Below are positions 8,576 through 29,522 of a DNA stretch of 32,658 bases, piece by piece. The notes below the pieces were generated by a model. The model saw nothing but the letters and a program-made list of their open reading frames with translations, ran no database searches and was not told the DNA's origin. Numbering within the stretch: the first letter of the stretch is position 1; each line of letters opens with the position of its first letter. This DNA comes from Bigelowiella natans CCMP2755 (Eukaryota; Protista; Cercozoa), in assembly GCA_000320545.1 (NCBI GenBank), contig ADNK01000613.1:1-32658 (forward strand), written 5' to 3'. The position numbers were made by a program, and so were the translations under genes.

Positions 8576-9023
8576 TAGTGAGAACTAACTAGTGAAACAA
8601 AAAGGAATCAAGAATGGCATTCTAGTCACTCCTCCATTCCTAGTTTCATTGTCTTTTGTGCCTGATCTGAAGAAAGTGATTGGATCTGAATGAAAACGTA
8701 TCGCAAAAAAGGAGTAACATCCTAGGAGGACATCTGCGATTTTCACTCTGCGTCAATGGTAATGGCGTATCTGTCTGCTACCAAAAGCAACAATGCAGCG
8801 TAACGACGGGTGATCATTGATAAAAAATGCTAAAAATAGAGCTAAACGACCAGCTTTTCTGCCGAAACCGCAGGCCTTTTCTGCTGTACTACTGCAGAGG
8901 GCGTGCTTCGACATCAACCCAGCCATTATTATCTATCACCTAATGCTAGTTGCACCGCCATCTGCCTGAAGAAAGGGTGCGCCCCACGCGAAAGATTGTT
9001 GACTGCCTGTGCAATTGGAAGCG

Positions 9024-10419
9024 ATGCAGGATCTTGTGGTAGGGTTTCGAGCCCGCATTTTCTTTTTCTCCATCCTCGCATGTAGCTTCAAGCTGGTAGT
9101 GACCTCGGAGGTAGACAAAGCCTCAATGTGGGACCAACTCAAGGAGCCCCCAGCGTCCAAAATGAAAGATGGGAGCGATTATGTGCACAAGATAGGGACT
9201 CATTATCACTTGAACATGGACCTCATGAGAAAATCACTAGAAGAAGGTCTCCTTCACTTTGCACCAAGGCTCTGAACGTAATCAATCTAAACTGGATCAC
9301 ATTAGGTGTAATTTCCTTACCATTGAACGATGGAAGCTTTGTGCGCTTCACGGTCAGAGATACCACAACCGAGGTTTGTCCCTTCTAATATTGATCTAGG
9401 GTCTTTTCCTCCCAGAATGCACCATTTTTCCTGCTAAATTCTCGTTGAATCACAATTCCTCAAGTTATTCTTTGAATGCGTAGATCATGCATCCAGATCT
9501 GGCCCGTAAATTCAGTGGCATTAAGACCTACCATATTAAGTCGCTTGATTCGCAAGTGGTGGCTAATGGGGATGTTTCCCTATCGATTAGCAATGGTTTC
9601 CACGCGCAAATCGTGTGCTATAAATGTGGCCATGTATACATCGACCCGCACTATGGATCTACTCGTTACTACACCTCGTACTCTGTGCATGAGAACTCAA
9701 AAAAATTTCAGAGTAAAATGCATCATTCTTGCCACAGTGGAATGGATGATGATAACGAAATCGAGAACCCAGACGGCACAGAATCAAAGCATCATCACCA
9801 TCACCATCACAGGCGTCATCATAGACAGCTTGTGGCACCACAAAACCTGGTCAGCCACATCCAAGTTCCCACCCAGTCGAACAATAGAATCTACCGCATT
9901 GCAATAGCCGCAAATGCTGACTATTGCAGATTTTTCGGGAATTCCGTTAACTCCTGCTTAGCCGCAGTGGTGACGTGCATGAATCGTGTGAGCGGTATCT
10001 ACAAGCGCGAGCTAGGAATTGGGCTGCAGTTGGTGGCTAATAGTGACCGACTGCTTTGCATCGACTGTCCACACATCTCTTTTTTCGGATCTGGACAAGA
10101 GGCCCTAGCGAATGACGCTAACGATGCGCTTCAGCAGGTAACAGGGTTCATCAATCGTCGCCTGAGCGGCAGCTCTGCTGACAGCACGGACTACGATATT
10201 GGGCACGTCCTTACCACGGCCCCGGGTGGAAAAGCAGCGAGAGGGGTCTGCAGCAACATTAACAAGGCGATTGGAACTACCGGAGCGCAAGATCCGCAAG
10301 GAGACGCATTTTGGGTGAGTTACGTCGCCCATGAGATAGGTCACCAGTTTGGCGCTCGCCACTCTTGGAACGGCAATCAAAAGTTCTGTCGCTTCTCCGA
10401 CTGGGACTCCAGCACCGCG

Positions 10420-10458
<39 letters not shown>

Positions 10459-11080
10459 CTTACTCTCCCTAATCTCACACAGTATTTGTTGGCACTATCT
10501 AATTGATGATATCGTTGGCCCCCCTTCCTTCTTTTCCCCCTTGCATGATGATTTTCTTGGGCGAAAAGGTATGAGCCTGGAAGTGGAAGCACGATCATGT
10601 CTTATGCCGGGATATGTAGTGACTCGGTGTTTCTAAGGGGTGACAACATCCAGCAGAACAGGTTGCTTGCTCATTCTAAGCCCGCCACTCTATAATTTCA
10701 CCGCCGCCGTTTTTCTCTCACCCGCTATGATGAATTTGTCTAACGCGCTCTACCCCATACCACCACCACACATGCACGCACAGCGATAGCTATTTTCACC
10801 TGGGAAATCTCGACGAGATCCAGACCTACATCGCTACGGACACAGTTGGCAGCTCGTGCGGCAATGTGATCTCCTCATCCAACAACATGCCCACCGTGAA
10901 CGTCTCAGCCTTTAATATCAACATCCCAAAGACACAGCCCTTCGTCCTCGTTCCAGGCCATGGTGCTGACGCCGATTCAGATACGCTGCTCTGGTCGTGG
11001 GAGCAGATTGACCTGGGTTTCGCTCAGGCGCCGCTCGCCTCGCCCATTTCTACCGGTGAGACGAAGAGAACTAAAATGCT

Positions 11081-11134
<54 letters not shown>

Positions 11135-11643
11135 CGTGTCGGTGATTTAGTGTAACGATCGTCGCATATGCTGGTGATCATAAAGTTCGGCGGATACGTG
11201 TTTCTTCTTCTTCCTCCTCCTCCTCTTCTTCTTCTCCTTCCTCAATTCACAAGGATATCAAGTACAATCTTATCCCCTCTCGTAGGTACGCCTCGATTCC
11301 GTAGCTATCCGCCAACCACAGCGAAGGAGCGTTTCTTCCCCAACTTCATTTGCTACCGCGACACATGTGACGATCTGATATGGGAGCAGCTACCCACTGC
11401 GGCGGGGACAATGAACTTTGCCGTGACAGTGCGTGACCACTTCAACCCGGCGTCGGACGTAGGGTATGGCTCCTGGGATGCTGACCGTATGCAGGTAGTA
11501 GGTGTCCTAAGAGAGACAGAGACGACAAGAAGAAAGAAAGATATGATGGGGATAATGCTGGTGATGCTGATGGTGATTATGCGTGAGATTCCGAATCGAG
11601 TTTGTGACTATACAGAGCAACCGATCTAAATACAACCACTATC

Positions 11644-11684
<41 letters not shown>

Positions 11685-14339
11685 CTCCCCCTCCTCTCGT
11701 CGCACACACACACACACACACGCACGCACGCACACACAGGTAAACGTCTACTCCGTTGGTCCTCTGGTGATAACGAACCCCACAATATCTACGGTCTGGG
11801 CCCAAAACGCTACGGCCACGGTGACGTGGAACGTGGCGGGGACGCAAGCCATCACCCCCTTCCTCTCCATAGAGCTCTCGGTGGATGACGGACTCAATTT
11901 TCCCTTTGTCATTGCAGCCAACGTCAGCAATGCGGGATCCGCTGTTGTCAACATCCCATGTGTGGGGAACGGAAGGTTCATCGAAGCCCGATTGATGGTC
12001 AAGTCCAAGGAAGCTGCAGGCGCCAACTACTGGTTGCTTTGTCTGTCGTTGTCGTGCTGCCGTGTCGAAAAATGAGAAAAGGAGGGTGGGGGGGTGGGGG
12101 ACGGGGGATGGAAACGAGGTGGGCTGATGCGATTCTATACATAGATGGATTATGGTATTTGTACAATGCCCAAATGAATGCTTATGGAACGGCAATCCAA
12201 CTCATGATCAGGTACGCGCTCTCTCCCAAGTTCCGACTCGGAGCCAATGGGGACTGCATCCCAGCTCAAACGCCGCCGCCTACCCCTCTCCCACCCTACA
12301 CCGGACAAACGCCAGTACCCACGCCAAGTCCCATATTCACGCCCACTTCCGCTCCCACGCGCGCCCCCACCCCCAAGACTGTGATTAAAGTCGAATTTAC
12401 CGCGCGGTTTGCAAACGTGCGCTATTCCTCCATTCATTCGAGCAACGCCGCAAATGCCGAATTCACAGCAAGCTGGAGGAAGGCTGTAACGGCAGCCTCC
12501 TCGGCCAGCTCCATCGACGAAGTTAGACTGAGGTAAGGGAGAAAGAGAGAAAGGAGAGGTTATGTGCGTCGTATGCGATGTTCTCTTGTCAATCAATGCT
12601 GATGGTGCTATCTTTCTCGTGAAGTAGCACATCTCCGCTACTAAATAACTATTACTACTCCTTCTTAAAACTGACAACAACAACAACTACTACTACTACT
12701 ACTACTACTACTACGATGACGACGACATTTGCCACCAGATACATCGAGCGGCTGCAATCCGGAAATGACCTCGGCATTCTGGTGGATGGCCATGTCGACT
12801 TCGATGCCGCAACGGAAGCAAATAAGGCTCCTCAGTTTGTGAGCAAGCTGAATGCGGGTGGCGGACAGGTGTTCAGCACCGCCAACGGCTTCGATACGAG
12901 TCAATATGGCGTGCCAACCATTTCGAACATCACCCAAGAATCACTGGACGCGCCTGGCAACCTGTGCGCAGCTGACAAAACATGCCACTTCATCGTTTGG
13001 GAAGCGTGGAACAGCGGCGAGTCAGCAATTGCAGTCTACGCTCAGGTGCTCTCCGTCTTCTTCATCGAACCATAATATACATTATATTACATGATTTTCG
13101 TCACCACGATCACAAGCATCATCACTGCAGCACTCCTCGCCCCTCAATCACCATGCATCATCATCCCCACAATCACCATTTGTAATTGGTTTTGTCGTCG
13201 CCCTCGTCCTCGTCCTCGTCCAGGTCGGAGACCAGATCATATTCTTTTGGAACGGGGATGAGAGCATCTACAGTGTGCAGACGCAGGCGGAATATGACAG
13301 CTGTGATTTCTCAAACGCGACCAAACTTTCAACACAGACAGACGAGAAAAGAAGCATGTACGGGCACCATATCAACGAGGATGTCTTGGGCAAGACGATA
13401 TACTTCGTCAGCGGAACATCGGCACAAGATCACATCTCCGCGACACTTTGCTCTCGTGGCCTCAAGGCAGCCGTACATGTGAGATTTGCACGACCAAAGA
13501 TCACGCTGACGAATTGACGATGATGATGATGATGATGATGATGGTCATGATGAGATTCCAAACCAAGGGTTTCGATGATGGCGAACACACGTACAAACAC
13601 AAGCATACAGTGAAAGAGAGAGATAGAGAGAGAAGAGAGAAGAAGGAGGGAAGAAAAACAAGAGCATCAATACTAAAAGCATTCATTCCGTTTGCATCTT
13701 GAGTAGGTTGAGGACAACCGACGATCGCGCACAACGTCGCTGCTAGACGACGAGAACTTGGCATTATTTCTCCTAGGGGCTTTTGCTGTCGGGGCGGTGC
13801 TTTTTGCGATCTACTGGAATTTCTGCCGCAATGCTTCTAAGGCAAAAATGGCAGAGTTCGACGAACATGAGCGCGGCGATGTCGCCTCCGTGCGCGACCT
13901 ACACAAGTTGGAAGCTGAAAACAGAACGAATGTCAACAAGTTCAACCCTACCAGAGGGTCATTCGCAAGATCCCCCCGGAACTCTTCACAACAACAGTCA
14001 CCGCTTGTGAGCCAGCAGAAACCCACGTTCGGAAAAGCTCAACGCCGCCAGACTCTGGACGAAAAAATGGCAGAGGAGTTGCGAAAGAGCGCTATATTGG
14101 AGGCGAACCAAGAGATGGAGGAGGAGGAGGAGGAAGAGGAGGGGGGGGGGGGGGGGGGCGCTTTTATGCCGAAGTTACAGAGGATTTCTACGCTTCCACC
14201 TGGCTGGACAGCCCATCACGACGGCGAAAATATTTATTACTATAACGAGAGAAGTGGGAAAAGTCAGTGGCACTTCCCAACTGCAACAGACAAAAAGTTT
14301 CTAGCTCGTCAACCCTCCGCTGTACACGTTTCCCTTTAG
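9024..14339 (+). CDS. ~1202-aa type I membrane zinc metalloprotease (reprolysin-like M12B metzincin) with Pro/Thr stalk, SEA-like module, phytocyanin/ENODL-like domain, transmembrane helix and cytosolic WW domain; 11 exons
   Basis: Exons: 9024-9246, 9306-9373, 9484-10418, 10569-10661, 10784-11055, 11286-11494, 11740-12032, 12212-12532, 12739-13045, 13224-13478, 13707-14339, total 3609 nt and in phase. Motifs: hydrophobic signal IFFFSILACSFKLVVTS; prodomain ISLPLNDGSFVRF..MHPDLARKF; zinc motif HEIGHQFGARH; Met-turn EPGSGSTIMSYAGIC; TM LALFLLGAFAVGAVLFAIYW; WW LPPGWTAHHDGENIYYYNERSGKSQWHFP. Confidence 0.88.
11081..11130. repeat. Compound (TG)n(AG)n intronic microsatellite
   Basis: Directly visible in intron 5 of the metalloprotease gene. 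(CT)n and (CA)n runs lie at 11646-11738 in intron 6. Confidence 0.95.
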
Positions 14340-15328
14340 AATGATTTCAAAATTGCTATGCTGCAAGTAAGCGCAAATAACAGAGACTCTACTTTTTTGT
14401 ACCACCGCGGAATTCCAAATTCTATGTGTGCACATCTGGAAGATGCAAATCGAACTTGAAACGCGTGAGCTATTCATAGCGCTCCGAGCAAGAAAATGCA
14501 TTAAGACTACCTTCTATACCATACAAGTCTATCAATAGAATGGTGGCAATAAGAAGAAGAAATGAAGCGAATGAGCAATCAATGCAAGTGCATGTTTGTG
14601 TGTTTGTCATTGGTGCGCTTGTTTTTCTTTCCTACTTGATCCTCTCTCCTACTCACTCTCTCTCTCTCTCCCTCTCTCTCCCTCTTCTCTCTTTTTTCTT
14701 TCAAAGTGTGCTTGTATGCACACACACACACACACACGTGTGTTTGCCATCATCAAATCTCATTGCGAATGTGTTGGTGCTGTGATCGTTCGCCGAAGGC
14801 TAGCCACACGTACGTGAAATGCATGTGAAGCCTTGGACAGGCACATGCCAGCCATTGCTTGCCATTGTGATCACTTGTTTGCGTGCTTTGCTGCTCGCAC
14901 ACCTCATGCTATGTTGCAGCTAGTGAATGACATCGATCTAGGTAGCCATCATCTGTCTCTTTACCGATCCCATCTACTATACAACATTGAATGACGAAAC
15001 TGCAATTTGCATCTCTATACATTCGTAGTGTCAATCATCAACAGCTCCATGTACATTTGCACAGTAGCTGCATGGCATTGGGATGACAAGTGAAAAAGTG
15101 TAATTATTTCATTACATAATTTGCGTACATCGATCGTCGCACGCGGCCGCTATAATATTCTGATATTCAAAGAGCTACGTCTACTACACTCGCATCGCTG
15201 CTGAACAATGCGCAAGAAGGCGACAGAATACATATACGCATGTACTTCATTCCAGCCACTACACTCTTGAATGCACACATTTATGCGTGGTCAGGTTGTT
15301 GCATTCGAACATCAGCCGACAATACACA

Positions 15329-16267
15329 TTATTCATCCCCAATAGCGATATGCTGGAGAACAGAGTTTGAGGGCGCGGACTCCTCGCTGAGACAGTCACT
15401 ACACATGTAGCCCTGATGATAATGTAAGCGGATTATTATGTGTGTTTGTTGCGCTATCATGTATCGTTCATCATTCAAAAGCAAACCGCATGCACCTTGG
15501 CTGCTGTGTAGCCAACGCTCGACCATGCAATAGCACACTAACGAGCTGCACTCTTAAATTATTTACCCGGATATCATCGAGCGTCAGCGTCGCACTTGCG
15601 CCAAGTTTGGTGACCATTGCGCTCCCAACCGCGCAACCCATTTGCAGCGCCTTCCTGACATCCCCGCTCCGACTCCATTCGAACAGATATCCACCTGTGA
15701 ACGCGTCTCCTGCGCCTGGGTAAAAGCCGATAAAGAGTCTGCTCATCAAATGCTTCTTGCTGGTTTTTGGTGATATATGGCCAGCAATCTCCGTTTTTAT
15801 CTTTTTCGGAAGAAACGCGAGTCCGATATCAAATAGTATATTGATAATAGGAATAATAATAGTAATAATAATAGTAGTAGCGTTGATGCCTACCGGCGCT
15901 GCGGCTACTACCTGTTGTATCGAGGACCTCACTAACATTTTTTGCCTTGTGCCAATACCATCGCACCACGGGGCTGTTCTTCTTCTTCTTACTGTCCTCC
16001 TCAGAGCTATGGTACTCACGAATGGAAGCCACCGCACCTTTCGCGCCTATGGTGACCTATCGTTTTGCGAAGATTGATTATGGTGGGCTGATGATGATAT
16101 TTTTTTATATTCGTCACGGGAGGAATGACCGAATCGCGCGGTTGTGTGTATAAATATGGATTTCTTTTATTTATTTCTTAATTAGCAACTAGTTAGCGGT
16201 GCAGACGATGGCCATTTTGAGGCCCTGAGAGTGAAATTTCTCCAACGCATCCCCTAGCTTCGCTTGC

Positions 16268-26318: not shown

Positions 26319-27721
26319 TCATCTCCTTCGACGAAGCCGCAAGAAAGATATTGCTACTGCAACAGTTCCTACCGCAAAGGCAGTAAATGCTGCCCCTAGT
26401 TTCAATCGTCGAGAATTTTTTCTCTCCTCTACAAGGCCACATACAAACTCCCTCCATCTAAGCGGTATCCAGTTATCGAAGTAGTCCCTCCCCGCTGATG
26501 AAGGCTTCTGCTCCACAACTCGGATCTCAAAGGGCCCTTCCATCATCTGCTTCCGGTCGTCTTTCCATGAGAAGCAACCCGCACCAGCACTTGCATAGAA
26601 AGGGTTCAACTCAACTACCTTGATGTCGTCTGGAGCTTGAGAAAGGACTAAGAAATCAATCACGTAGCTTTCGTGTGTCTCTGCAAGTTTGTCGCGGACG
26701 TGCTTCTTGAAATATTGACAAATTTGCTCGCCGATGGCTTTCTTCCTTGAGACTAGCTCTGGAAACACAACGCTTGTGAAGTATTGCGTGGCGGAATTCA
26801 GCTGGCCTTTGTATACAAAGCACCGAAACTCGCCCTCCGGATGATTCACCACCCGTTCGTCCCACTCTCTCAGAACGATCTGGACGTCAAAGAAGTCCTT
26901 TCCATACGAGAGCGCTGCTGATAGGTCCTCAGATATCCTGAATGAGTGAATGAATACCTTCAGCAGTTCCAAGCCTGAACACACCGCCAATGCCCTGTTT
27001 TGAGCACGGATGAACGCCATCACAATTTCGTTAGCGCTGTCGCCACTGTAGACATCTCCCAAAAGGGGTAGGTGCAAGCTTCGGAGCTCATTCTTTACCA
27101 GCTGCTGGTATGCAATCTCAGATGGATTGTAGAGCGCGGAATCCTTCGGAGAACGCGTGTCTAGCTTAGCCATCACCGTGCTGAATTTGTGTTCAGCAAG
27201 AGTCTTGTCAATGCGTGCTGCCAGATGTGTGAGGACTTTAGAGCCGGCGATCAAACCGGGAGCAGTCACTTCAAAGTTCTTACGATTCTGAAAGCATTTT
27301 GCAGTACCGTTTGTCACCCAATCATGCAATCACTGAAAAGTGCAAAGGTGGAGCACAACCTGCGCTCTGACGTATTCCTTGCAAGCGCCAGAGAGCACCT
27401 TGGCCTCCTCAAATGTCAAGTCCACGAAGGCGGTGGGGAAGGTGTGGGCCCTGAGAGTCGAATACCAACTTCTTATTCCAAATTGTTTCTTGTAATAGCG
27501 AATCCTGTAGCTCTGCGCAACCTTCGCCGGAATGCCCATGGCAACAATCTGATTCGTTTTCTCTACATCACCAACGCGACATTTGAGAAATAAATATCTT
27601 CAATATCGACCTGTTCATCCGTGATCCAATGTTTATGCTCAAATCTAGTCCCTGCCATGCTTCTCACGGGGTTAGGCTTTCCCTCTACAGCCGCTGCAGT
27701 GTCCTCCTTTACCAGGTCCAT
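26319..27721 (-). CDS. CDC123/D123-like ATP-grasp protein (R2K-type) with a C-terminal tail anchor, ~422 aa, 3 exons
   Basis: Exons (-): 27721-27611, 27548-27360, 27287-26319, with 62- and 72-nt GT-AG introns in phase 0. Motifs: WY..L..HTFPT, AKLDTRSPKD, SFRISEDL, IVLREW, EFRCFVYKGQLNSATQY, YVIDF, VVELNPF..SAGAGCFSW. The C-terminus is LGAAFTAFAVGTVAVAISFLRLRRRR. Confidence 0.85.
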
Positions 27722-28451: not shown

Positions 28452-29522
28452 ATGAGACTCCCGATGACCTTCAAAGGCTTTGCACGCGAAACGTCCAGTC
28501 TGGCTACTGGCATAGCGTCGGTGGAGATCATAGAGGATCTACTGTATAACCTCTTTTTCTTCAGCACTTTCATGGCACCCGGAGCCCTTGCTCTATATAG
28601 CTGCTACAACTTTCCGATGTTCTCCATTCCCATAGTCTTGGCATATTACACTTCCATTGCTTTGCGTGAATTAGAAACAACTGACGGTTCTCCATCGGAA
28701 CCGTTCTCACGGGACTTTCCGATCTTTACGATGAAGCGCAGGCATCACAGCTTGCGGCTGGTTCGGCCACCATCAGGAAGCCTGGACCCCGCTCGAATGT
28801 CCGAATACCTAAACTCATCGAAAAGCGCTTCCTACGTGTTTGCATGCCATCCTCACGGAGTTGCAGCCCAATGGAGGACCTGGATGGAGGGTCTCATGTA
28901 CACGACGTTTCCAGCTCTCGCTCGAAAGCGTGGTTGGCGTACGTTAGCTGCATCAGTATTGTTCTGGATGCCGCTGGTGCGAGAGATTGTCCTCTGGACG
29001 GGGTGCGTGGACGCGAGCAGGAAGACGGCACAGCTCCAGCTTCAGAAAGGTCGATCCCTGGTCATTCTTCCAGGGGGTGAGGCGGAGCAGCTACGAACAA
29101 AATTCGGTCAAGAGCGTGTCACCCTGAAGAACCGCATGGGCTTTGTAGCGCTTGCGGTGGAGTCCGGGACGCCTCTAGTCCCCGTGTATGTTTTTGGGTG
29201 CAGTGATCTGTATTACACCTTTGGCCCTTTCTTCGGATTCAGAGAAGCTGTGCGGAAGGTGCTCCGGGTCTGTTTGCCTCTCTTTCTAGGTGATTTCGGG
29301 TTGGCACCGCGGCGTGGGGTCAAGGTGACGGTTGTCTTTGGCGACCCAATTCCGGTCAACAGGGTGAAGAGGCCGCGACATGACGCAGCGGACGAACAGA
29401 AAGAACACTTTCGAAGTGTAGTGCAGAAGGTTCATAGAATGTATATAGAGAGACTAGCCAAGCTATTTGATGACGCCAAAGCTGATCTAGGTTTCGAGGA
29501 AAGGAAACTAGTGGTGGAGTAA
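28452..29522 (+). CDS. DGAT2: Diacylglycerol/monoacylglycerol acyltransferase, DGAT2 family
   Basis: A 356-aa uninterrupted ORF with N-terminal hydrophobic segments, YVFACHPHG, PGGEAE, RMGFVALAVESGTPLVPVYVFG and VVFGDPI. An AG sits just upstream (28449-28450), so a 5' exon (28154-28311, in frame) or a 5' UTR intron is possible. Confidence 0.92.
   Translation: MRLPMTFKGFARETSSLATGIASVEIIEDLLYNLFFFSTFMAPGALALYSCYNFPMFSIPIVLAYYTSIALRELETTDGSPSEPFSRDFPIFTMKRRHHSLRLVRPPSGSLDPARMSEYLNSSKSASYVFACHPHGVAAQWRTWMEGLMYTTFPALARKRGWRTLAASVLFWMPLVREIVLWTGCVDASRKTAQLQLQKGRSLVILPGGEAEQLRTKFGQERVTLKNRMGFVALAVESGTPLVPVYVFGCSDLYYTFGPFFGFREAVRKVLRVCLPLFLGDFGLAPRRGVKVTVVFGDPIPVNRVKRPRHDAADEQKEHFRSVVQKVHRMYIERLAKLFDDAKADLGFEERKLVVE

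What the first reader, a model, noticed from the sequence alone, without database searches (positions are those of the whole stretch)
9024..14339. ADAM-analogous receptor/sheddase built from a bacterial-type reprolysin, SEA-like and phytocyanin modules and a cytosolic WW domain
Seen in sequence: one in-phase 11-exon gene running signal peptide, prodomain, HExxHxxGxxH/Met-turn catalytic domain, beta-rich domains, Pro/Thr stalk, SEA-like region, phytocyanin-like domain, single TM, then a tail with poly-E/G and a WW domain. Established knowledge: EPGSGSTIMSYAGIC, PRFRSYPPT..ERFFP, MNFAVTVRD and VTWNVAGT...IELSVDDG.NFP are hallmarks of secreted bacterial reprolysin-like M12B proteases. Animal ADAMs use disintegrin/Cys-rich/EGF ectodomains and Pro-rich tails, not WW domains. 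Inference: a horizontally acquired bacterial protease was intronised and rebuilt into a surface protease coupled to cytosolic proline-motif partners. I do not know this architecture from any characterised protein.
Basis: partly seen in the sequence, partly recalled or inferred. Interest (0 to 1): 0.8.

Follow-up and report, generated by a model that had tools for sequence, protein, structure and literature searches.

The report
Bacterial-type surface protease with WW tail
A marine alga (by its assembly statistics, Bigelowiella natans) has a real 11-exon gene that joins a protease block otherwise found in bacteria to a home-made stalk, two small surface domains, a membrane anchor and a cytosolic WW domain. 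The alga's own ADAM proteases carry the same kind of WW tail, so this looks like a second, independently built ADAM-like surface protease.

Summary
Window 9024-14339 (+) holds one 11-exon gene with all introns GT-AG and in frame. The CDS is 3609 nt and encodes 1202 aa.

- **Layout:** signal peptide, ADAM17-like prodomain, adamalysin-fold catalytic domain (HEIGHQFGARH plus Met-turn), two beta domains, Pro/Thr stalk, SEA-like domain, copper-less phytocyanin/ephrin-like domain, one TM helix, and a tail with a WW domain.
- **Relatives with the same layout:** three uninterrupted ORFs, in two transcript-like contigs and one marine metagenome scaffold. One of the three lacks the WW domain. A partial gene in Amorphochlora shares two intron positions with the window's gene.
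- **Origin of the first ~600 aa:** this block belongs to a large bacterial family of secreted "reprolysin-like/M12" peptidases. The five eukaryotic sequences form one clade among them (SH-aLRT 99). A bacterial origin followed by intron gain and fusion is well supported; the donor is unresolved.
- **New here:** the genome also has three disintegrin loci. Two are shown to be genuine ADAM genes with a TM helix and a WW domain; the third is untested. A Norrisiella ADAM has the WW tail too. In this lineage the WW tail is therefore the usual ADAM tail, not a peculiarity of this gene.

Function as a sheddase or receptor is inferred, not shown. I found no paper describing the architecture. I rate it a new variant of a known kind. 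The scan has no earlier finding of this gene on other DNA.

The parts
9024..9246 (+). Exon 1: start codon, signal peptide (hydrophobic core FFFSILACSF at 9060-9089) and first part of the prodomain-like N-domain
   Evidence: It aligns with the N-terminus of the Amorphochlora protein P0001. Intron 1 (59 nt, phase 1 in a Gly codon) has the same position and phase as in Amorphochlora.
9306..9373 (+). Exon 2: 22 whole codons of the N-domain (VISLPLNDGSFVRFTVRDTTTE)
   Evidence: It matches the bacterial family consensus LPxPDGxxxxF. Intron 2 (110 nt, phase 0) is shared with Amorphochlora.
9484..10418 (+). Exon 3: rest of the prodomain-like domain, His-rich linker, and the catalytic domain up to the zinc motif. 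The linker Cys is in HHSCHSG at 9721-9741, the His run is at 9790-9825, and HEIGHQFGARH is at 10330-10362.
   Evidence: Pfam Reprolysin_4, _3, _5 and _2. HMMER gives 4431 relatives. The linker Cys column is conserved in 71% of 78 aligned rows. The AF2 model of relative P0049 matches the ADAM17 zymogen at Z 20.7.
10569..10661 (+). Exon 4: end of the catalytic domain with the Met-turn block EPGSGSTIMSY (10573-10605)
   Evidence: Reprolysin_4 profile positions 162-184. E, P, G, S, G, T and I of this block are nearly invariant in the family alignment.
10784..11494 (+). Exons 5 and 6 (10784-11055 and 11286-11494): the beta domain after the catalytic domain, shared with the bacterial relatives. Motifs: LLWSWEQIDLG at 10986-11018, PRFRSYPP at 11291-11314, MNFAVTVRD at 11411-11437.
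   Evidence: Colinear tblastn, family consensus, and strands in the AF2 model of P0049 at residues 393-530.
11740..12032 (+). Exon 7: Ig-like beta-sandwich domain (VTWNVAGT at 11821-11844, IELSVDDGLNFP at 11869-11904). This is the last block shared with bacteria.
   Evidence: Weak Pfam Kre9_KNH Ig-like hit, E = 0.026. Model residues 532-632 match beta-sandwich domains at Z about 7-8. Bacterial hits cover only the first 50-62% of the full-length profile.
12212..12532 (+). Exon 8: end of the beta domain, Pro/Thr stalk (12270-12374) and start of the SEA-like domain (KVEFTARF at 12387-12410)
12739..13045 (+). Exon 9: rest of the SEA-like ferredoxin-like domain and first strands of the cupredoxin domain. 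LGILVDGHVDFD at 12770-12805 lies in the beta2-beta3 turn and has no Ser after the Gly. The Cys pair CAADKTCHF is at 12965-12991.
   Evidence: AF2 model of the P0002 ectodomain. VIA gives Z 7-8.4 to MUC16 SEA, a dystrophin-glycoprotein complex chain, Trop2 and PCDH15 MAD12. hhalign gives 91.6% probability to the juxtamembrane domain of a mucin-like gene of the same genome, which has LGSVVAD at that site.
13224..13478 (+). Exon 10: copper-less phytocyanin/ephrin-like cupredoxin domain (IIFFWNGDE at 13236-13262, YDSC at 13293-13304, LCSRGLK at 13446-13466)
   Evidence: Pfam Cu_bind_like E = 0.0018, below the cut-off. Foldseek top hit is plantacyanin 1f56. VIA: umecyanin Z 10.4, stellacyanin 10.1, mavicyanin 10.0, ephrins about 9. 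No invariant His or Met in this domain among three full-length relatives; four invariant Cys only.
13707..14339 (+). Exon 11: TM helix (13758-13823), cytosolic tail with a poly-Glu/poly-Gly run (14118-14159), WW domain (14193-14279) and stop codon (14337-14339)
   Evidence: Hydropathy and sequence. Pfam WW E = 1.1e-8, 35.4 bits. Basic residues follow the TM helix, which fits a tail on the cytosolic side.

Best explanation
This is a functional nuclear gene of a chlorarachniophyte alga. The assembly statistics are those published for Bigelowiella natans CCMP2755. It encodes a 1202-aa type I membrane zinc metalloprotease.

**The N-terminal ~600 aa** consist of an ADAM17-like prodomain with a linker Cys, an adamalysin-fold catalytic domain with an intact HExxHxxGxxH motif and Met-turn, and two beta domains. 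This block descends from a bacterial family of secreted 'reprolysin-like/M12' peptidases. It entered an ancestor of chlorarachniophytes by horizontal transfer and then gained spliceosomal introns.

**The C-terminal ~600 aa** are eukaryote-built:
- a Pro/Thr stalk;
- a non-cleaving SEA-like domain, related to the one in a mucin-like surface protein of the same alga;
- a copper-less phytocyanin/ephrin-like domain;
- one TM helix;
- a cytosolic tail that ends in a WW domain.

The alga's own ADAM proteins also end in TM plus WW. The most likely working model is therefore a cell-surface, ADAM-like ectoprotease. It would be made as a zymogen and held away from the membrane on a stalk. Its trafficking, turnover or signalling would be governed by proline-motif (PPxY-type) partners that bind the WW tail, by the same cytosolic machinery that serves the native ADAMs.

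What is shown and what is inferred:
- **Shown:** gene structure, domain identities and folds, the family and its bacterial kinship, and WW tails on native ADAMs.
- **Inferred:** protease activity, zymogen latency through the linker Cys, surface location, and any shedding or receptor role.
For: **Gene model:** 11 exons, all GT-AG and in frame; colinear with homologues.

**Single-ORF relatives with the same order of domains:**
- P0002, 988 aa, an uninterrupted ORF in a metagenome scaffold.
- P0004, 1061 aa, and P0049, 1072 aa, in transcript-like contigs.

**Nuclear, not a contaminant:** the neighbours are ordinary eukaryotic genes (D123/ATP-grasp, DGAT, PfkB).

**Organism:** 91.4 Mb, 3,736 contigs and GC 45% equal the published B. 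natans assembly.

**Protease block:**
- Pfam Reprolysin_2 to _5.
- Model pLDDT 89.6. ADAM17 zymogen Z 20.7 over prodomain plus catalytic domain; snake-venom adamalysins TM 0.75.
- Zinc motif and Met-turn block conserved.

**Bacterial kinship:**
- At least 561 relatives in bacterial species genomes of eight phyla, covering exon 3 end to end.
- Named relatives are 'reprolysin-like metallopeptidase' or 'M12 family', many with T9SS sorting domains.
- Scores fall from about 1700 to 445 bits after the eukaryotic members, and bacterial hits cover only 50-62% of the profile.
- The five eukaryotic rows form one clade (support 99) next to marine Bacteroidota rows.

**Age in the lineage:** introns 1 and 2 are shared in position and phase with Amorphochlora.

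**C-terminal folds:**. The SEA-like paralogue sits in a mucin-like gene.

**WW tails on native ADAMs:**
Against: - There are no expression data for this very gene. The B. natans protein itself did not appear in the protein searches, so its splicing rests on sequence logic and on relatives.
- No biochemical evidence exists for this family, bacterial or eukaryotic, so activity and substrates are unknown.
- One full-length relative (P0049) has no WW domain, so the WW is not indispensable to the family.
- The window's WW is not clearly closer to the ADAM WWs than to other WW domains of the genome (scores 93 against 92, 91 and 90). A shared origin of the tails is therefore unproven.
- The SEA-like match is only middling (Z 7-8.4) and Pfam SEA does not hit.
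- The tree is unrooted, the careful search did not finish, and the donor phylum is weakly supported (SH-aLRT 83 with long branches).
Confidence: 0.75

Rival explanations
1. It is a surface-tethered feeding or matrix-remodelling protease. The alga kept the bacterial enzyme for what it does in bacteria, namely bulk extracellular protein degradation, and simply anchored it. The WW tail would serve only routine sorting or endocytosis, with no shedding or signalling role.
For: The bacterial relatives are secreted multi-domain degradative-type enzymes, many of them T9SS cargo. The whole ~600-aa bacterial block, including its non-catalytic beta domains, is retained. One relative lacks the WW domain. 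From my own knowledge, chlorarachniophytes are amoeboid and some take up prey.
Against: The conserved addition of a SEA-like and an ephrin/phytocyanin-like interaction domain, and a tail of the same kind as on native ADAMs, point to more than a plain tether. The gene is single-copy, unlike typical expanded digestive protease families.
Confidence: 0.3
2. It is mainly an adhesion or recognition receptor in which the protease is latent or vestigial. The phytocyanin/ephrin-like and SEA-like domains would do the work, as in catalytically inactive ADAMs such as ADAM22.
For: The cupredoxin domain has lost its copper ligands, as ephrins and (from my own knowledge) plant early-nodulin-like proteins have, and these act in binding. 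ADAM22, an inactive ADAM, is among the structural matches.
Against: The zinc-binding motif residues H, E, H, G and H and the Met-turn block are invariant in the full-length eukaryotic members and present in the window. This argues for retained catalysis.
Confidence: 0.1
3. It is an artefact: bacterial contamination, a misassembly, or two adjacent genes (a secreted protease and a separate TM/WW protein) wrongly read as one.
For: No transcript of this exact gene was retrieved. The protease block is bacterial in type.
Against: There are ten canonical spliceosomal introns, two of them shared with another chlorarachniophyte. The flanking genes are eukaryotic. Three relatives carry the whole architecture in one uninterrupted ORF, two of them in transcript-like contigs. 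No stop or plausible terminator/initiator break separates the halves.
Confidence: 0.03
4. It is a vertically inherited, highly divergent eukaryotic ADAM rather than a bacterial acquisition.
For: The pro-plus-catalytic unit resembles ADAM17 structurally (Z 20.7). The genome does contain true ADAMs.
Against: The window's exons do not hit Pfam Reprolysin PF01421, Pep_M12B_propep or Disintegrin, whereas the genome's true ADAMs do. The nearest 145 HMMER hits outside the small eukaryotic clade are long proteins of bacterial type. They share the prodomain, catalytic and two downstream beta domains at 36-49% identity. The self-search of the genome with exon 3 does not even pick up the native ADAMs.
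Confidence: 0.05

Closest known systems
Bacterial 'reprolysin-like metallopeptidase / M12 family metallo-peptidase' proteins (Pfam Reprolysin_2 to _5). Examples are Ignavibacterium album IALB_1293 and the Hymenobacter, Herpetosiphon, Verrucomicrobiota and Planctomycetota homologues, many carrying a T9SS C-terminal sorting domain.
   Same: The first ~600 aa are colinear: prodomain-like N-domain, catalytic domain with HEIGHQFG..H and EPGSGSTIM.YAG, the LTYxWEQxDLG / PLFRS / TVRD beta domain and the Ig-like domain. Identity is 30-49%.
   Different: The bacterial proteins end in secretion or adhesion modules (T9SS sorting domain, P-domain, cadherin-like, FN3). This gene instead has a stalk, a SEA-like domain, a cupredoxin-like domain, a TM helix and a WW domain, and it is split by ten spliceosomal introns. 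I know of no biochemically characterised member of the family.
Animal ADAMs, especially ADAM17/TACE (zymogen structures 8snl and 9o54)
   Same: Type I membrane layout with signal peptide, prodomain, adamalysin-fold zinc protease, non-catalytic ectodomain modules, TM helix and a cytosolic tail that recruits partners. The structural match covers prodomain plus catalytic domain at Z 20.7, with 336 residues aligned at 17% identity.
   Different: There is no disintegrin, Cys-rich or EGF module and no Pfam Reprolysin or Pep_M12B_propep hit. The tail carries a WW domain rather than the Pro-rich SH3/WW-ligand motifs of animal ADAM tails (the latter from established knowledge). Its ancestry is separate and bacterial.
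Native ADAM-type proteins of chlorarachniophytes: G000:C2987 (897-aa open frame), G000:C2575, and Norrisiella sphaerica P0273
   Same: They occur in the same organism or lineage, are also membrane metalloproteases, and have the same kind of ending: a TM helix, a tail of about 60-130 aa, and a WW domain close to the C-terminus. The WW domains are 48% identical.
   Different: These are true ADAMs (Reprolysin PF01421, Disintegrin PF00200, Cys-rich; the Norrisiella protein also has Pep_M12B_propep). They have no detectable sequence relation to the window's SEA-like or cupredoxin module.
Fragilysin / metalloproteinase II of Bacteroides fragilis (7pnd, 4on1)
   Same: A bacterial adamalysin-fold protease with a prodomain; structural match Z 14.5-14.8.
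   Different: It is much smaller, belongs to a different sequence family, and has no downstream beta domains.
Phytocyanins (umecyanin, stellacyanin, mavicyanin, plantacyanin) and ephrin ectodomains
   Same: The cupredoxin fold of the membrane-proximal domain: Z 10.4-8.6 and about 20% identity to phytocyanins, Z about 9 to ephrins. A conserved Cys pair lies where, from memory, phytocyanins have their disulfide.
   Different: No conserved His, Cys-ligand or Met/Gln copper ligands. The Pfam hit is below the cut-off. Here the domain is one module of a large protease.
SEA domains of transmembrane mucins (MUC16) and related juxtamembrane domains (a dystrophin-glycoprotein complex chain, Trop2, PCDH15 MAD12)
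   Same: A beta-alpha-beta-beta-alpha-beta ferredoxin-like sandwich that follows a mucin-like stalk in a type I membrane protein, Z 7-8.4. A paralogous domain in a mucin-like gene of the same genome has LGSVVAD at the position of the classical G/SVVV site.
   Different: No Pfam SEA hit. The window has G-I-L-V with no Ser nucleophile, so self-cleavage is not expected. The domain is separated from the membrane by the cupredoxin domain.

Membership tests
Bacterial reprolysin-like / M12 metallopeptidase family (Pfam Reprolysin_4, PF13583, and kin) | Pfam match above the curated cut-off | tested here: met
   Exon 3 scores 68.3 bits for PF13583 against a cut-off of 22. PF13582, PF13688 and PF13574 also pass.
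Bacterial reprolysin-like / M12 metallopeptidase family (Pfam Reprolysin_4, PF13583, and kin) | HExxHxxGxxH zinc motif and Met-turn block EPGSGSTIM | tested here: met
   HEIGHQFGARH lies at 10330-10362 and EPGSGSTIMSY at 10573-10605. Both are nearly invariant in the 83-row alignment.
Bacterial reprolysin-like / M12 metallopeptidase family (Pfam Reprolysin_4, PF13583, and kin) | Colinear N-domain and two post-catalytic beta domains with the family's motifs | tested here: met
   Alignments A2 and A4. Bacterial loci match exon 3 residues 1-311. Bacterial hits cover 50-62% of the full-length profile.
Bacterial reprolysin-like / M12 metallopeptidase family (Pfam Reprolysin_4, PF13583, and kin) | Bacterial secretion or anchoring module at the C-terminus (such as a T9SS sorting domain) | tested here: not met
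   There is no such domain. The C-terminal half is a stalk, a SEA-like domain, a cupredoxin-like domain, a TM helix and a WW domain.
ADAM (a disintegrin and metalloprotease) | Adamalysin-fold catalytic domain with a prodomain, in a type I membrane protein | tested here: met
   ADAM17 zymogen Z 20.7 on the model of relative P0049. Signal peptide and single TM helix in the window.
ADAM (a disintegrin and metalloprotease) | Pfam Reprolysin PF01421 and Pep_M12B_propep PF01562 | tested here: not met
   Neither hits any exon at E <= 1. Only relative P0002 gives PF01421, at 0.0015 and below the cut-off.
ADAM (a disintegrin and metalloprotease) | Disintegrin and Cys-rich domains after the protease | tested here: not met
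   No PF00200 hit in the window. The three disintegrin loci of the genome lie elsewhere.
ADAM (a disintegrin and metalloprotease) | Cysteine-switch latency | tested here: inconclusive
   A Cys in the disordered linker is conserved in 71% of 78 rows, the window included. Its contact with the zinc was not examined.
WW domain (PF00397) | Pfam match above the cut-off, with two Trp and the terminal Pro | tested here: met
   35.4 bits against 26.9. The sequence is LPPGWTAHHDGENIYYYNERSGKSQWHFP at 14193-14279.
Phytocyanin / Cu_bind_like (PF02298) | Cupredoxin fold closest to phytocyanins | tested here: met
   Tested on the homologue model: umecyanin Z 10.4 (rmsd 2.3, 96 aligned, 20% identity), stellacyanin 10.1, mavicyanin 10.0. 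Foldseek's top hit is plantacyanin.
Phytocyanin / Cu_bind_like (PF02298) | Pfam match above the cut-off | tested here: not met
   18.6 bits against a cut-off of 20.8, E = 0.0018. The relatives give no hit, and a profile search of PDB sequences gives none.
Phytocyanin / Cu_bind_like (PF02298) | Type-1 copper ligands (His, Cys, His, Met/Gln) | tested here: not met
   No invariant His or Met in the domain among three full-length members. The only invariant Cys are two pairs.
SEA domain (PF01390) | Ferredoxin-like alpha/beta sandwich next to the membrane, after a mucin-like stalk | tested here: met
   The secondary-structure order is beta-alpha-beta-beta-alpha-beta. MUC16 SEA Z 7.7 and 7.2, a dystrophin-glycoprotein complex chain 7.7, Trop2 7.0. 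These Z values are middling, so this is fold-level evidence only.
SEA domain (PF01390) | Pfam match | tested here: not met
   No SEA hit for the window's exons, the relatives or the mucin-like paralogue.
SEA domain (PF01390) | G/S[VI]VV autoproteolysis motif in the beta2-beta3 turn | tested here: not met
   The window has LGILVD, P0002 has GVLAD and P0004 has GILVD. The paralogous mucin-like gene has LGSVVAD.

The most novel reading that the evidence does not exclude
Chlorarachniophytes run a lineage-specific way of coupling membrane metalloproteases to the cytosol. Both their native ADAMs and this bacterial-derived ADAM17-like enzyme carry a C-terminal WW domain. That domain would dock onto unknown PPxY-type (and, in one relative, ubiquitin-binding zinc-finger-linked) partners to control ectodomain shedding or contact signalling. 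The xenologous protease, with its ephrin/phytocyanin-like domain, would then be a convergent, independently assembled sheddase/receptor outside animals.
Probability: 0.2. Interest if true: 0.8.

Novelty: new variant of a known kind. Interest (0 to 1): 0.58.

Why it matters
It is a clean, checkable case of a eukaryote taking a ready-made bacterial pro-protease and rebuilding it into a membrane protein. The result has the layout of an ADAM, and even the same kind of cytosolic tail as the host's own ADAMs.

It also shows that true ADAM-type genes, here with WW tails, exist in Rhizaria. An older survey that had only ESTs for B. natans placed the origin of ADAMs in opisthokonts (PMC2770060).

If the WW tails really couple these proteases to a common cytosolic partner, that would reveal how regulated surface proteolysis is organised in a major but little-studied branch of eukaryotes. 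It would also give the uncharacterised bacterial protease family its first functional handle.

Tried and rejected
**Searches that found nothing**
- PDB sequence search with exon 3 and with the ectodomain profile A1: no useful match.
- NCBIfam scan of the exons: only noise.
- ESM Atlas look-up of the C-terminal ectodomain: no usable hit.
- Literature searches found no description of this architecture. These covered reprolysin + Bigelowiella; reprolysin + HGT + protist; and disintegrin + B. natans.

**Searches limited by the method**
- The search for related loci with the single exon in bacterial genomes found none. The alignment-based scan then worked.
- The word search with the C-terminal half of P0002 found only P0002 and P0004 and missed P0049. 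The profile search in turn missed P0002. Absence in these word searches is therefore weak evidence.
- The metagenome scan with the ectodomain alignment found no conserved stretch for A1 and no confirmed relative for A5.
- Cluster look-ups of the top bacterial-type hits gave almost no names.

**Work that could not be completed**
- The 'careful' IQ-TREE search did not finish in two 300-s runs, so I used the quick tree and the FastTree tree.
- The IQ-TREE set had 85 of the 231 rows: the 35 rows nearest the eukaryotic clade, up to six named rows per phylum, and 12 random unnamed rows. The remaining 146 rows were left out.
- The Amorphochlora gene runs off its contig end, so its C-terminal architecture could not be checked.

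**Ideas tested and not supported**
- That the window's WW is specifically derived from the ADAM WWs: the scores are tied with other WW domains.
- That the juxtamembrane region of the native ADAMs is homologous to the window's SEA-like domain: no signal.

**Rejected explanations**
- Contamination, two separate genes, and a vertically inherited ADAM. See the rival explanations.

**Deliberately left out**
All searches used single exons by reference or database relatives.

Full report
**1. What is in the sequence**

Three-frame translation of 8900-14500 shows eleven open coding pieces on the + strand. For every gap there is one GT...AG pair that keeps the frame and restores the sequence seen in homologues.

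The exons are 9024-9246, 9306-9373, 9484-10418, 10569-10661, 10784-11055, 11286-11494, 11740-12032, 12212-12532, 12739-13045, 13224-13478 and 13707-14339. The introns are 59-245 nt. The CDS is 3609 nt and encodes 1202 aa, and an in-frame stop lies upstream of the ATG.

Proteins P0001, P0002 and P0004 hit exons 3-11 in order by tblastn.

Every search used single exons by reference, or natural relatives returned by the tools.

**2. Whose genome**

The window is a whole contig of an assembly of 91,405,885 bases in 3,736 contigs. Table 1 of PMC12730881 gives exactly these figures (91.4 Mbp, 3,736 contigs, GC 45%) for the Bigelowiella natans assembly of Curtis et al.. The short, frequent introns fit as well.

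The neighbouring genes are ordinary eukaryotic ones: D123/ATP-grasp, a DGAT-type acyltransferase and a PfkB kinase. Nothing here is human.

**3. Domain by domain**

*Catalytic domain.*
- Exon 3 hits Reprolysin_4, _3, _5 and _2 (best E = 9e-19). Exon 4 hits the C-terminal part of Reprolysin_4.
- The zinc motif HEIGHQFGARH (10330-10362) and the Met-turn block EPGSGSTIMSY (10573-10605) are intact.

*Model of the first 632 residues.* I modelled the complete relative P0049 with an 83-row alignment that included the window's exons as separate rows. The model has pLDDT 89.6 and pTM 0.91. Its best structural matches are:
- the human ADAM17 zymogen: 8snl_A, Z 20.7, 336 residues aligned, model residues 6-395, that is prodomain plus catalytic domain; and 9o54_A, Z 20.0;
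- ADAM, ADAMTS and snake-venom catalytic domains at Z 13-16, with Foldseek TM 0.75 to H2-proteinase and atrolysin C;
- profragilysin at Z 14.5.

The disordered linker between the prodomain and the catalytic domain is His-rich in the eukaryotic members. It holds a Cys that is conserved in 71% of 78 aligned rows. A cysteine-switch role for it is an inference.

*Beta domains.* After the catalytic domain come a beta domain (exons 5-6) and an Ig-like sandwich (exon 7; model residues 532-632, Z about 7-8). Both are shared with the bacterial relatives.

*C-terminal ectodomain.* I modelled residues 624-867 of the near-intronless relative P0002, taken by locus reference. The alignment had three relatives and the window's exons 8, 9 and 10 as separate rows. 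Mean pLDDT is 76. The model has two domains:
- Domain 1 is a beta-alpha-beta-beta-alpha-beta sandwich. Its best VIA matches are dominated by juxtamembrane SEA-type domains: MUC16 SEA at Z 7.7 and 7.2, a dystrophin-glycoprotein complex chain at 7.7, Trop2 at 7.0, PCDH15 MAD12, CELSR1 and CARD1 at 8.4. These Z values are in the range where only the fold can be claimed.
- Domain 2 matches phytocyanins best: umecyanin Z 10.4 (rmsd 2.3, 96 aligned, 20% identity), stellacyanin 10.1, mavicyanin 10.0. Foldseek's top hit is plantacyanin. Ephrin ectodomains follow at Z about 9.

*Independent support for domain 1.* A self-search of the genome with exon 9 finds a second gene at G000:C1189. Its 396-aa ORF is a Ser/Pro/Ala/Thr mucin-like repeat, then a domain related to domain 1 (hhalign 91.6%, E = 8e-7), then a TM helix. 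In that gene the beta2-beta3 turn reads LGSVVAD, like the classical G/SVVV self-cleavage site. The protease family has G-I/V-L there, so self-cleavage is not expected.

*Copper site of domain 2.* Among three full-length relatives the domain has no invariant His or Met and only four invariant Cys. A type-1 copper site is therefore not conserved. Pfam Cu_bind_like stays just below its cut-off.

*Exon 11.* It encodes a clear TM helix followed by basic residues, a tail with a Glu8-Gly6 run, and a WW domain above the Pfam cut-off. This is a type I topology with the WW domain in the cytosol.

**4. Relatives**

A full HMMER scan of 1.84 billion representatives with exon 3 gave 4431 hits. Four stand out among the top 150.

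| Protein | Source | Length | Content |
|---|---|---|---|
| P0001 | Amorphochlora amoebiformis (GAB5369559.1), partial because the gene runs off its contig | 399 aa | Signal peptide to Met-turn |
| P0002 | ENA marine metagenome scaffold, one uninterrupted ORF | 988 aa | Full layout with WW |
| P0004 | JGI 3300017015, a 3.9-kb transcript-like contig | 1061 aa | Full layout, with a RanBP2-type zinc finger before the WW |
| P0049 | JGI 3300017038, complete ORF | 1072 aa | Full ectodomain and TM, but no WW |

These rest. The architecture is therefore a small conserved family, and the WW domain is frequent in it but not universal.

A profile of the three full-length proteins scored them at about 1700 bits. 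The next hits scored 445 bits or less and covered only 50-62% of the profile. Where named, those hits are bacterial 'reprolysin-like metallopeptidase' or 'M12 family metallo-peptidase' proteins, often with T9SS sorting domains (PF18962), P-domains, FN3 or cadherin-like repeats.

In species-representative bacterial genomes at least 561 loci encode relatives that match exon 3 end to end at 30-38% identity. They come from Bacteroidota, Verrucomicrobiota, Planctomycetota, Ignavibacteriota, Chloroflexota, Pseudomonadota, Acidobacteriota and Rhodothermota.

The genome itself has one copy of the protease block and of the cupredoxin exon.

**5. Origin**

In a FastTree of 231 domain sequences, and in an IQ-TREE quick tree (LG+C20 PMSF) of 85 rows, the five eukaryotic rows form one clade with support 99. 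Their nearest rows are marine Flavobacteriales and other Bacteroidota, one of them with a T9SS domain. That placement has only 83-90 support, involves long branches, and the tree is unrooted. The careful search did not finish.

The family has thousands of bacterial members in many phyla, against one small eukaryotic clade. Transfer from bacteria to an ancestor of these algae is therefore the economical reading. The donor remains open.

Exact mapping of P0001 on its locus gives 19 exons for 399 aa. Its introns after '...LLEAG' (phase 1, in the Gly codon) and after '...DTTNM' (phase 0) coincide in position and phase with introns 1 and 2 of the window. The third intron lies two codons away. The gene was therefore already intron-bearing before Bigelowiella and Amorphochlora diverged.

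**6. The WW tail in context (new)**

Following that lead, I searched the genome for WW domains and found 73 matches. I then looked for a TM helix in the same open frame.

- **G000:C2987.** One hit is a single 897-aa open frame with Reprolysin PF01421, HExxHxxGxxH, Disintegrin PF00200, 41 Cys, a TM helix and a WW domain. This is a genuine ADAM with a WW tail.
- **The three disintegrin loci.** C2575 also has Reprolysin + Disintegrin, followed by a TM-like exon and a Pfam-confirmed WW exon. C2585 has a WW-like sequence downstream that I did not test with Pfam.
- **Other evidence.** A B. natans MMETSP transcript (P0272, 100% identity, Disintegrin + WW) shows that the C2987 gene is expressed. Norrisiella sphaerica has a complete ADAM, P0273, with propeptide, Reprolysin, Disintegrin and WW. 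The next relatives are animal and fungal ADAMs without a WW domain.

So in chlorarachniophytes the native ADAMs end in TM plus WW, and the bacterial-type protease has the same kind of ending. Its WW is 48% identical to that of C2987 and lies at the same distance from the C-terminus.

Two limits apply. The window's WW is not clearly nearer to ADAM WWs than to other WW domains. I also found no sequence link between the ADAM juxtamembrane regions and the SEA-like domain.

**7. How it most likely works**

Shown:
- a secretory-pathway type I membrane protein;
- a complete, ADAM17-like pro-protease unit with intact catalytic motifs, held on a Pro/Thr stalk;
- two small non-catalytic ectodomain modules of kinds that elsewhere serve binding and membrane-proximal mechanics;
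- a cytosolic WW domain.

Inferred:
- It is made as a zymogen and activated by removal of the prodomain at the disordered His-rich linker.
- It acts at the cell surface on proteins of the alga itself or of its surroundings.
- Its WW tail binds proline-motif partners that also serve the native ADAMs, controlling sorting, turnover or signalling.

The zinc finger in P0004's tail resembles, from my memory of the NZF motif, ubiquitin-binding fingers. That would fit a link to ubiquitin-dependent sorting, but I did not test it.

The main rival is a plain tethered degradative enzyme. An adhesion-only role is less likely because the catalytic residues are conserved. Artefact and vertical-ADAM readings are essentially excluded.

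**8. Comparison and novelty**

The protein works like an ADAM but is not a member of that family: it has no PF01421 or PF01562 hit and no disintegrin domain. Its protease block is a member of the bacterial Reprolysin_4-type family. Its cupredoxin and SEA-like domains are fold-level relatives only.

I found no paper describing this architecture or WW-tailed ADAMs. The proteins exist in databases only as unnamed or hypothetical entries.

I rate it a new variant of a known kind, the membrane-anchored adamalysin-type protease. It has an unusually clear evolutionary story and an unexpected parallel with the host's own ADAMs. Interest is 0.58. Function is untested, and chimeric genes built on transferred DNA are not rare in this genome's literature. 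The convergence on an ADAM layout and the lineage-wide WW tails are, however, worth a specialist's attention.

Noticed in passing
G000:C2987:13320-16010, minus strand (L122:821-3511:-): A single 897-aa open frame encodes a genuine ADAM-type protein: Reprolysin PF01421 with HExxHxxGxxH, Disintegrin PF00200, a Cys-rich region, a TM helix and a C-terminal WW domain. An MMETSP transcript (P0272) matches it at 100% identity. ADAM plus WW seems undescribed.
   Followed up: partly
G000:C2575:26714-30795 (L123), G000:C2585:3808-8035 (L124), and P0273: Two more disintegrin loci have a WW-coding frame downstream on the same strand. In C2575 the Reprolysin, Disintegrin and WW domains are Pfam-confirmed. 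In C2585 the disintegrin match comes from the genome search and the WW-like sequence was seen by eye only. Norrisiella sphaerica P0273 is a complete ADAM with propeptide, Reprolysin, Disintegrin, a Pro/Thr stalk, a region holding 'AGSVVMT', a TM helix and a WW domain. A 2009 survey (PMC2770060) placed the origin of ADAMs in opisthokonts.
   Followed up: partly
G000:C1189:14477-15667, minus strand (L088:1363-2553:-): A mucin-like type I membrane protein: long Ser/Pro/Ala/Thr repeats, then a SEA-like domain with 'LGSVVAD' (like the classical G/SVVV self-cleavage site), a TM helix and a short tail. There is no Pfam hit. It is related to the window's SEA-like domain (hhalign 91.6%).
   Followed up: partly
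G000:C3227:32828-33160 (L096/L098): A large open frame holds several TM-like segments and two WW domains, so WW domains on membrane proteins recur in this genome. About 73 WW matches were found genome-wide.
   Followed up: no
L005 (JGI 3300017015), P0004 residues 930-955: The tail of one family member carries a RanBP2/NZF-type zinc finger (PF00641, 27.2 bits) just before the WW domain. From memory it resembles ubiquitin-binding NZF fingers.
   Followed up: no
L091 (Amorphochlora amoebiformis BAAHQB010000257.1): The orthologous gene is split into at least 19 exons of 6-49 codons over 12 kb for its first 399 aa (locus GC 28%), and it runs off the contig end. This is an extreme example of that genome's intron richness.
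   Followed up: partly
window 9790-9825, and the equivalent linkers of P0002 and P0004: A run of His (HHHHHHHRRHHR in the window) sits in the disordered linker between the prodomain and the catalytic domain. It is seen in most eukaryotic members but not in the bacterial rows shown. Its role is unknown; metal binding or a processing site are possibilities.
   Followed up: no
window 10420-10460, 11090-11135, 11650-11735 and other introns: Introns and intergenic DNA are full of (TA)n, (GA)n and (CA)n microsatellites.
   Followed up: no
window 26319-27329 (-), 28452-29522 (+), 15471-16037 (-): The neighbouring genes are a D123/ATP-grasp R2K-type protein with a C-terminal TM-like end, a DGAT-type acyltransferase, and an exon of a PfkB-family kinase.
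   Followed up: partly
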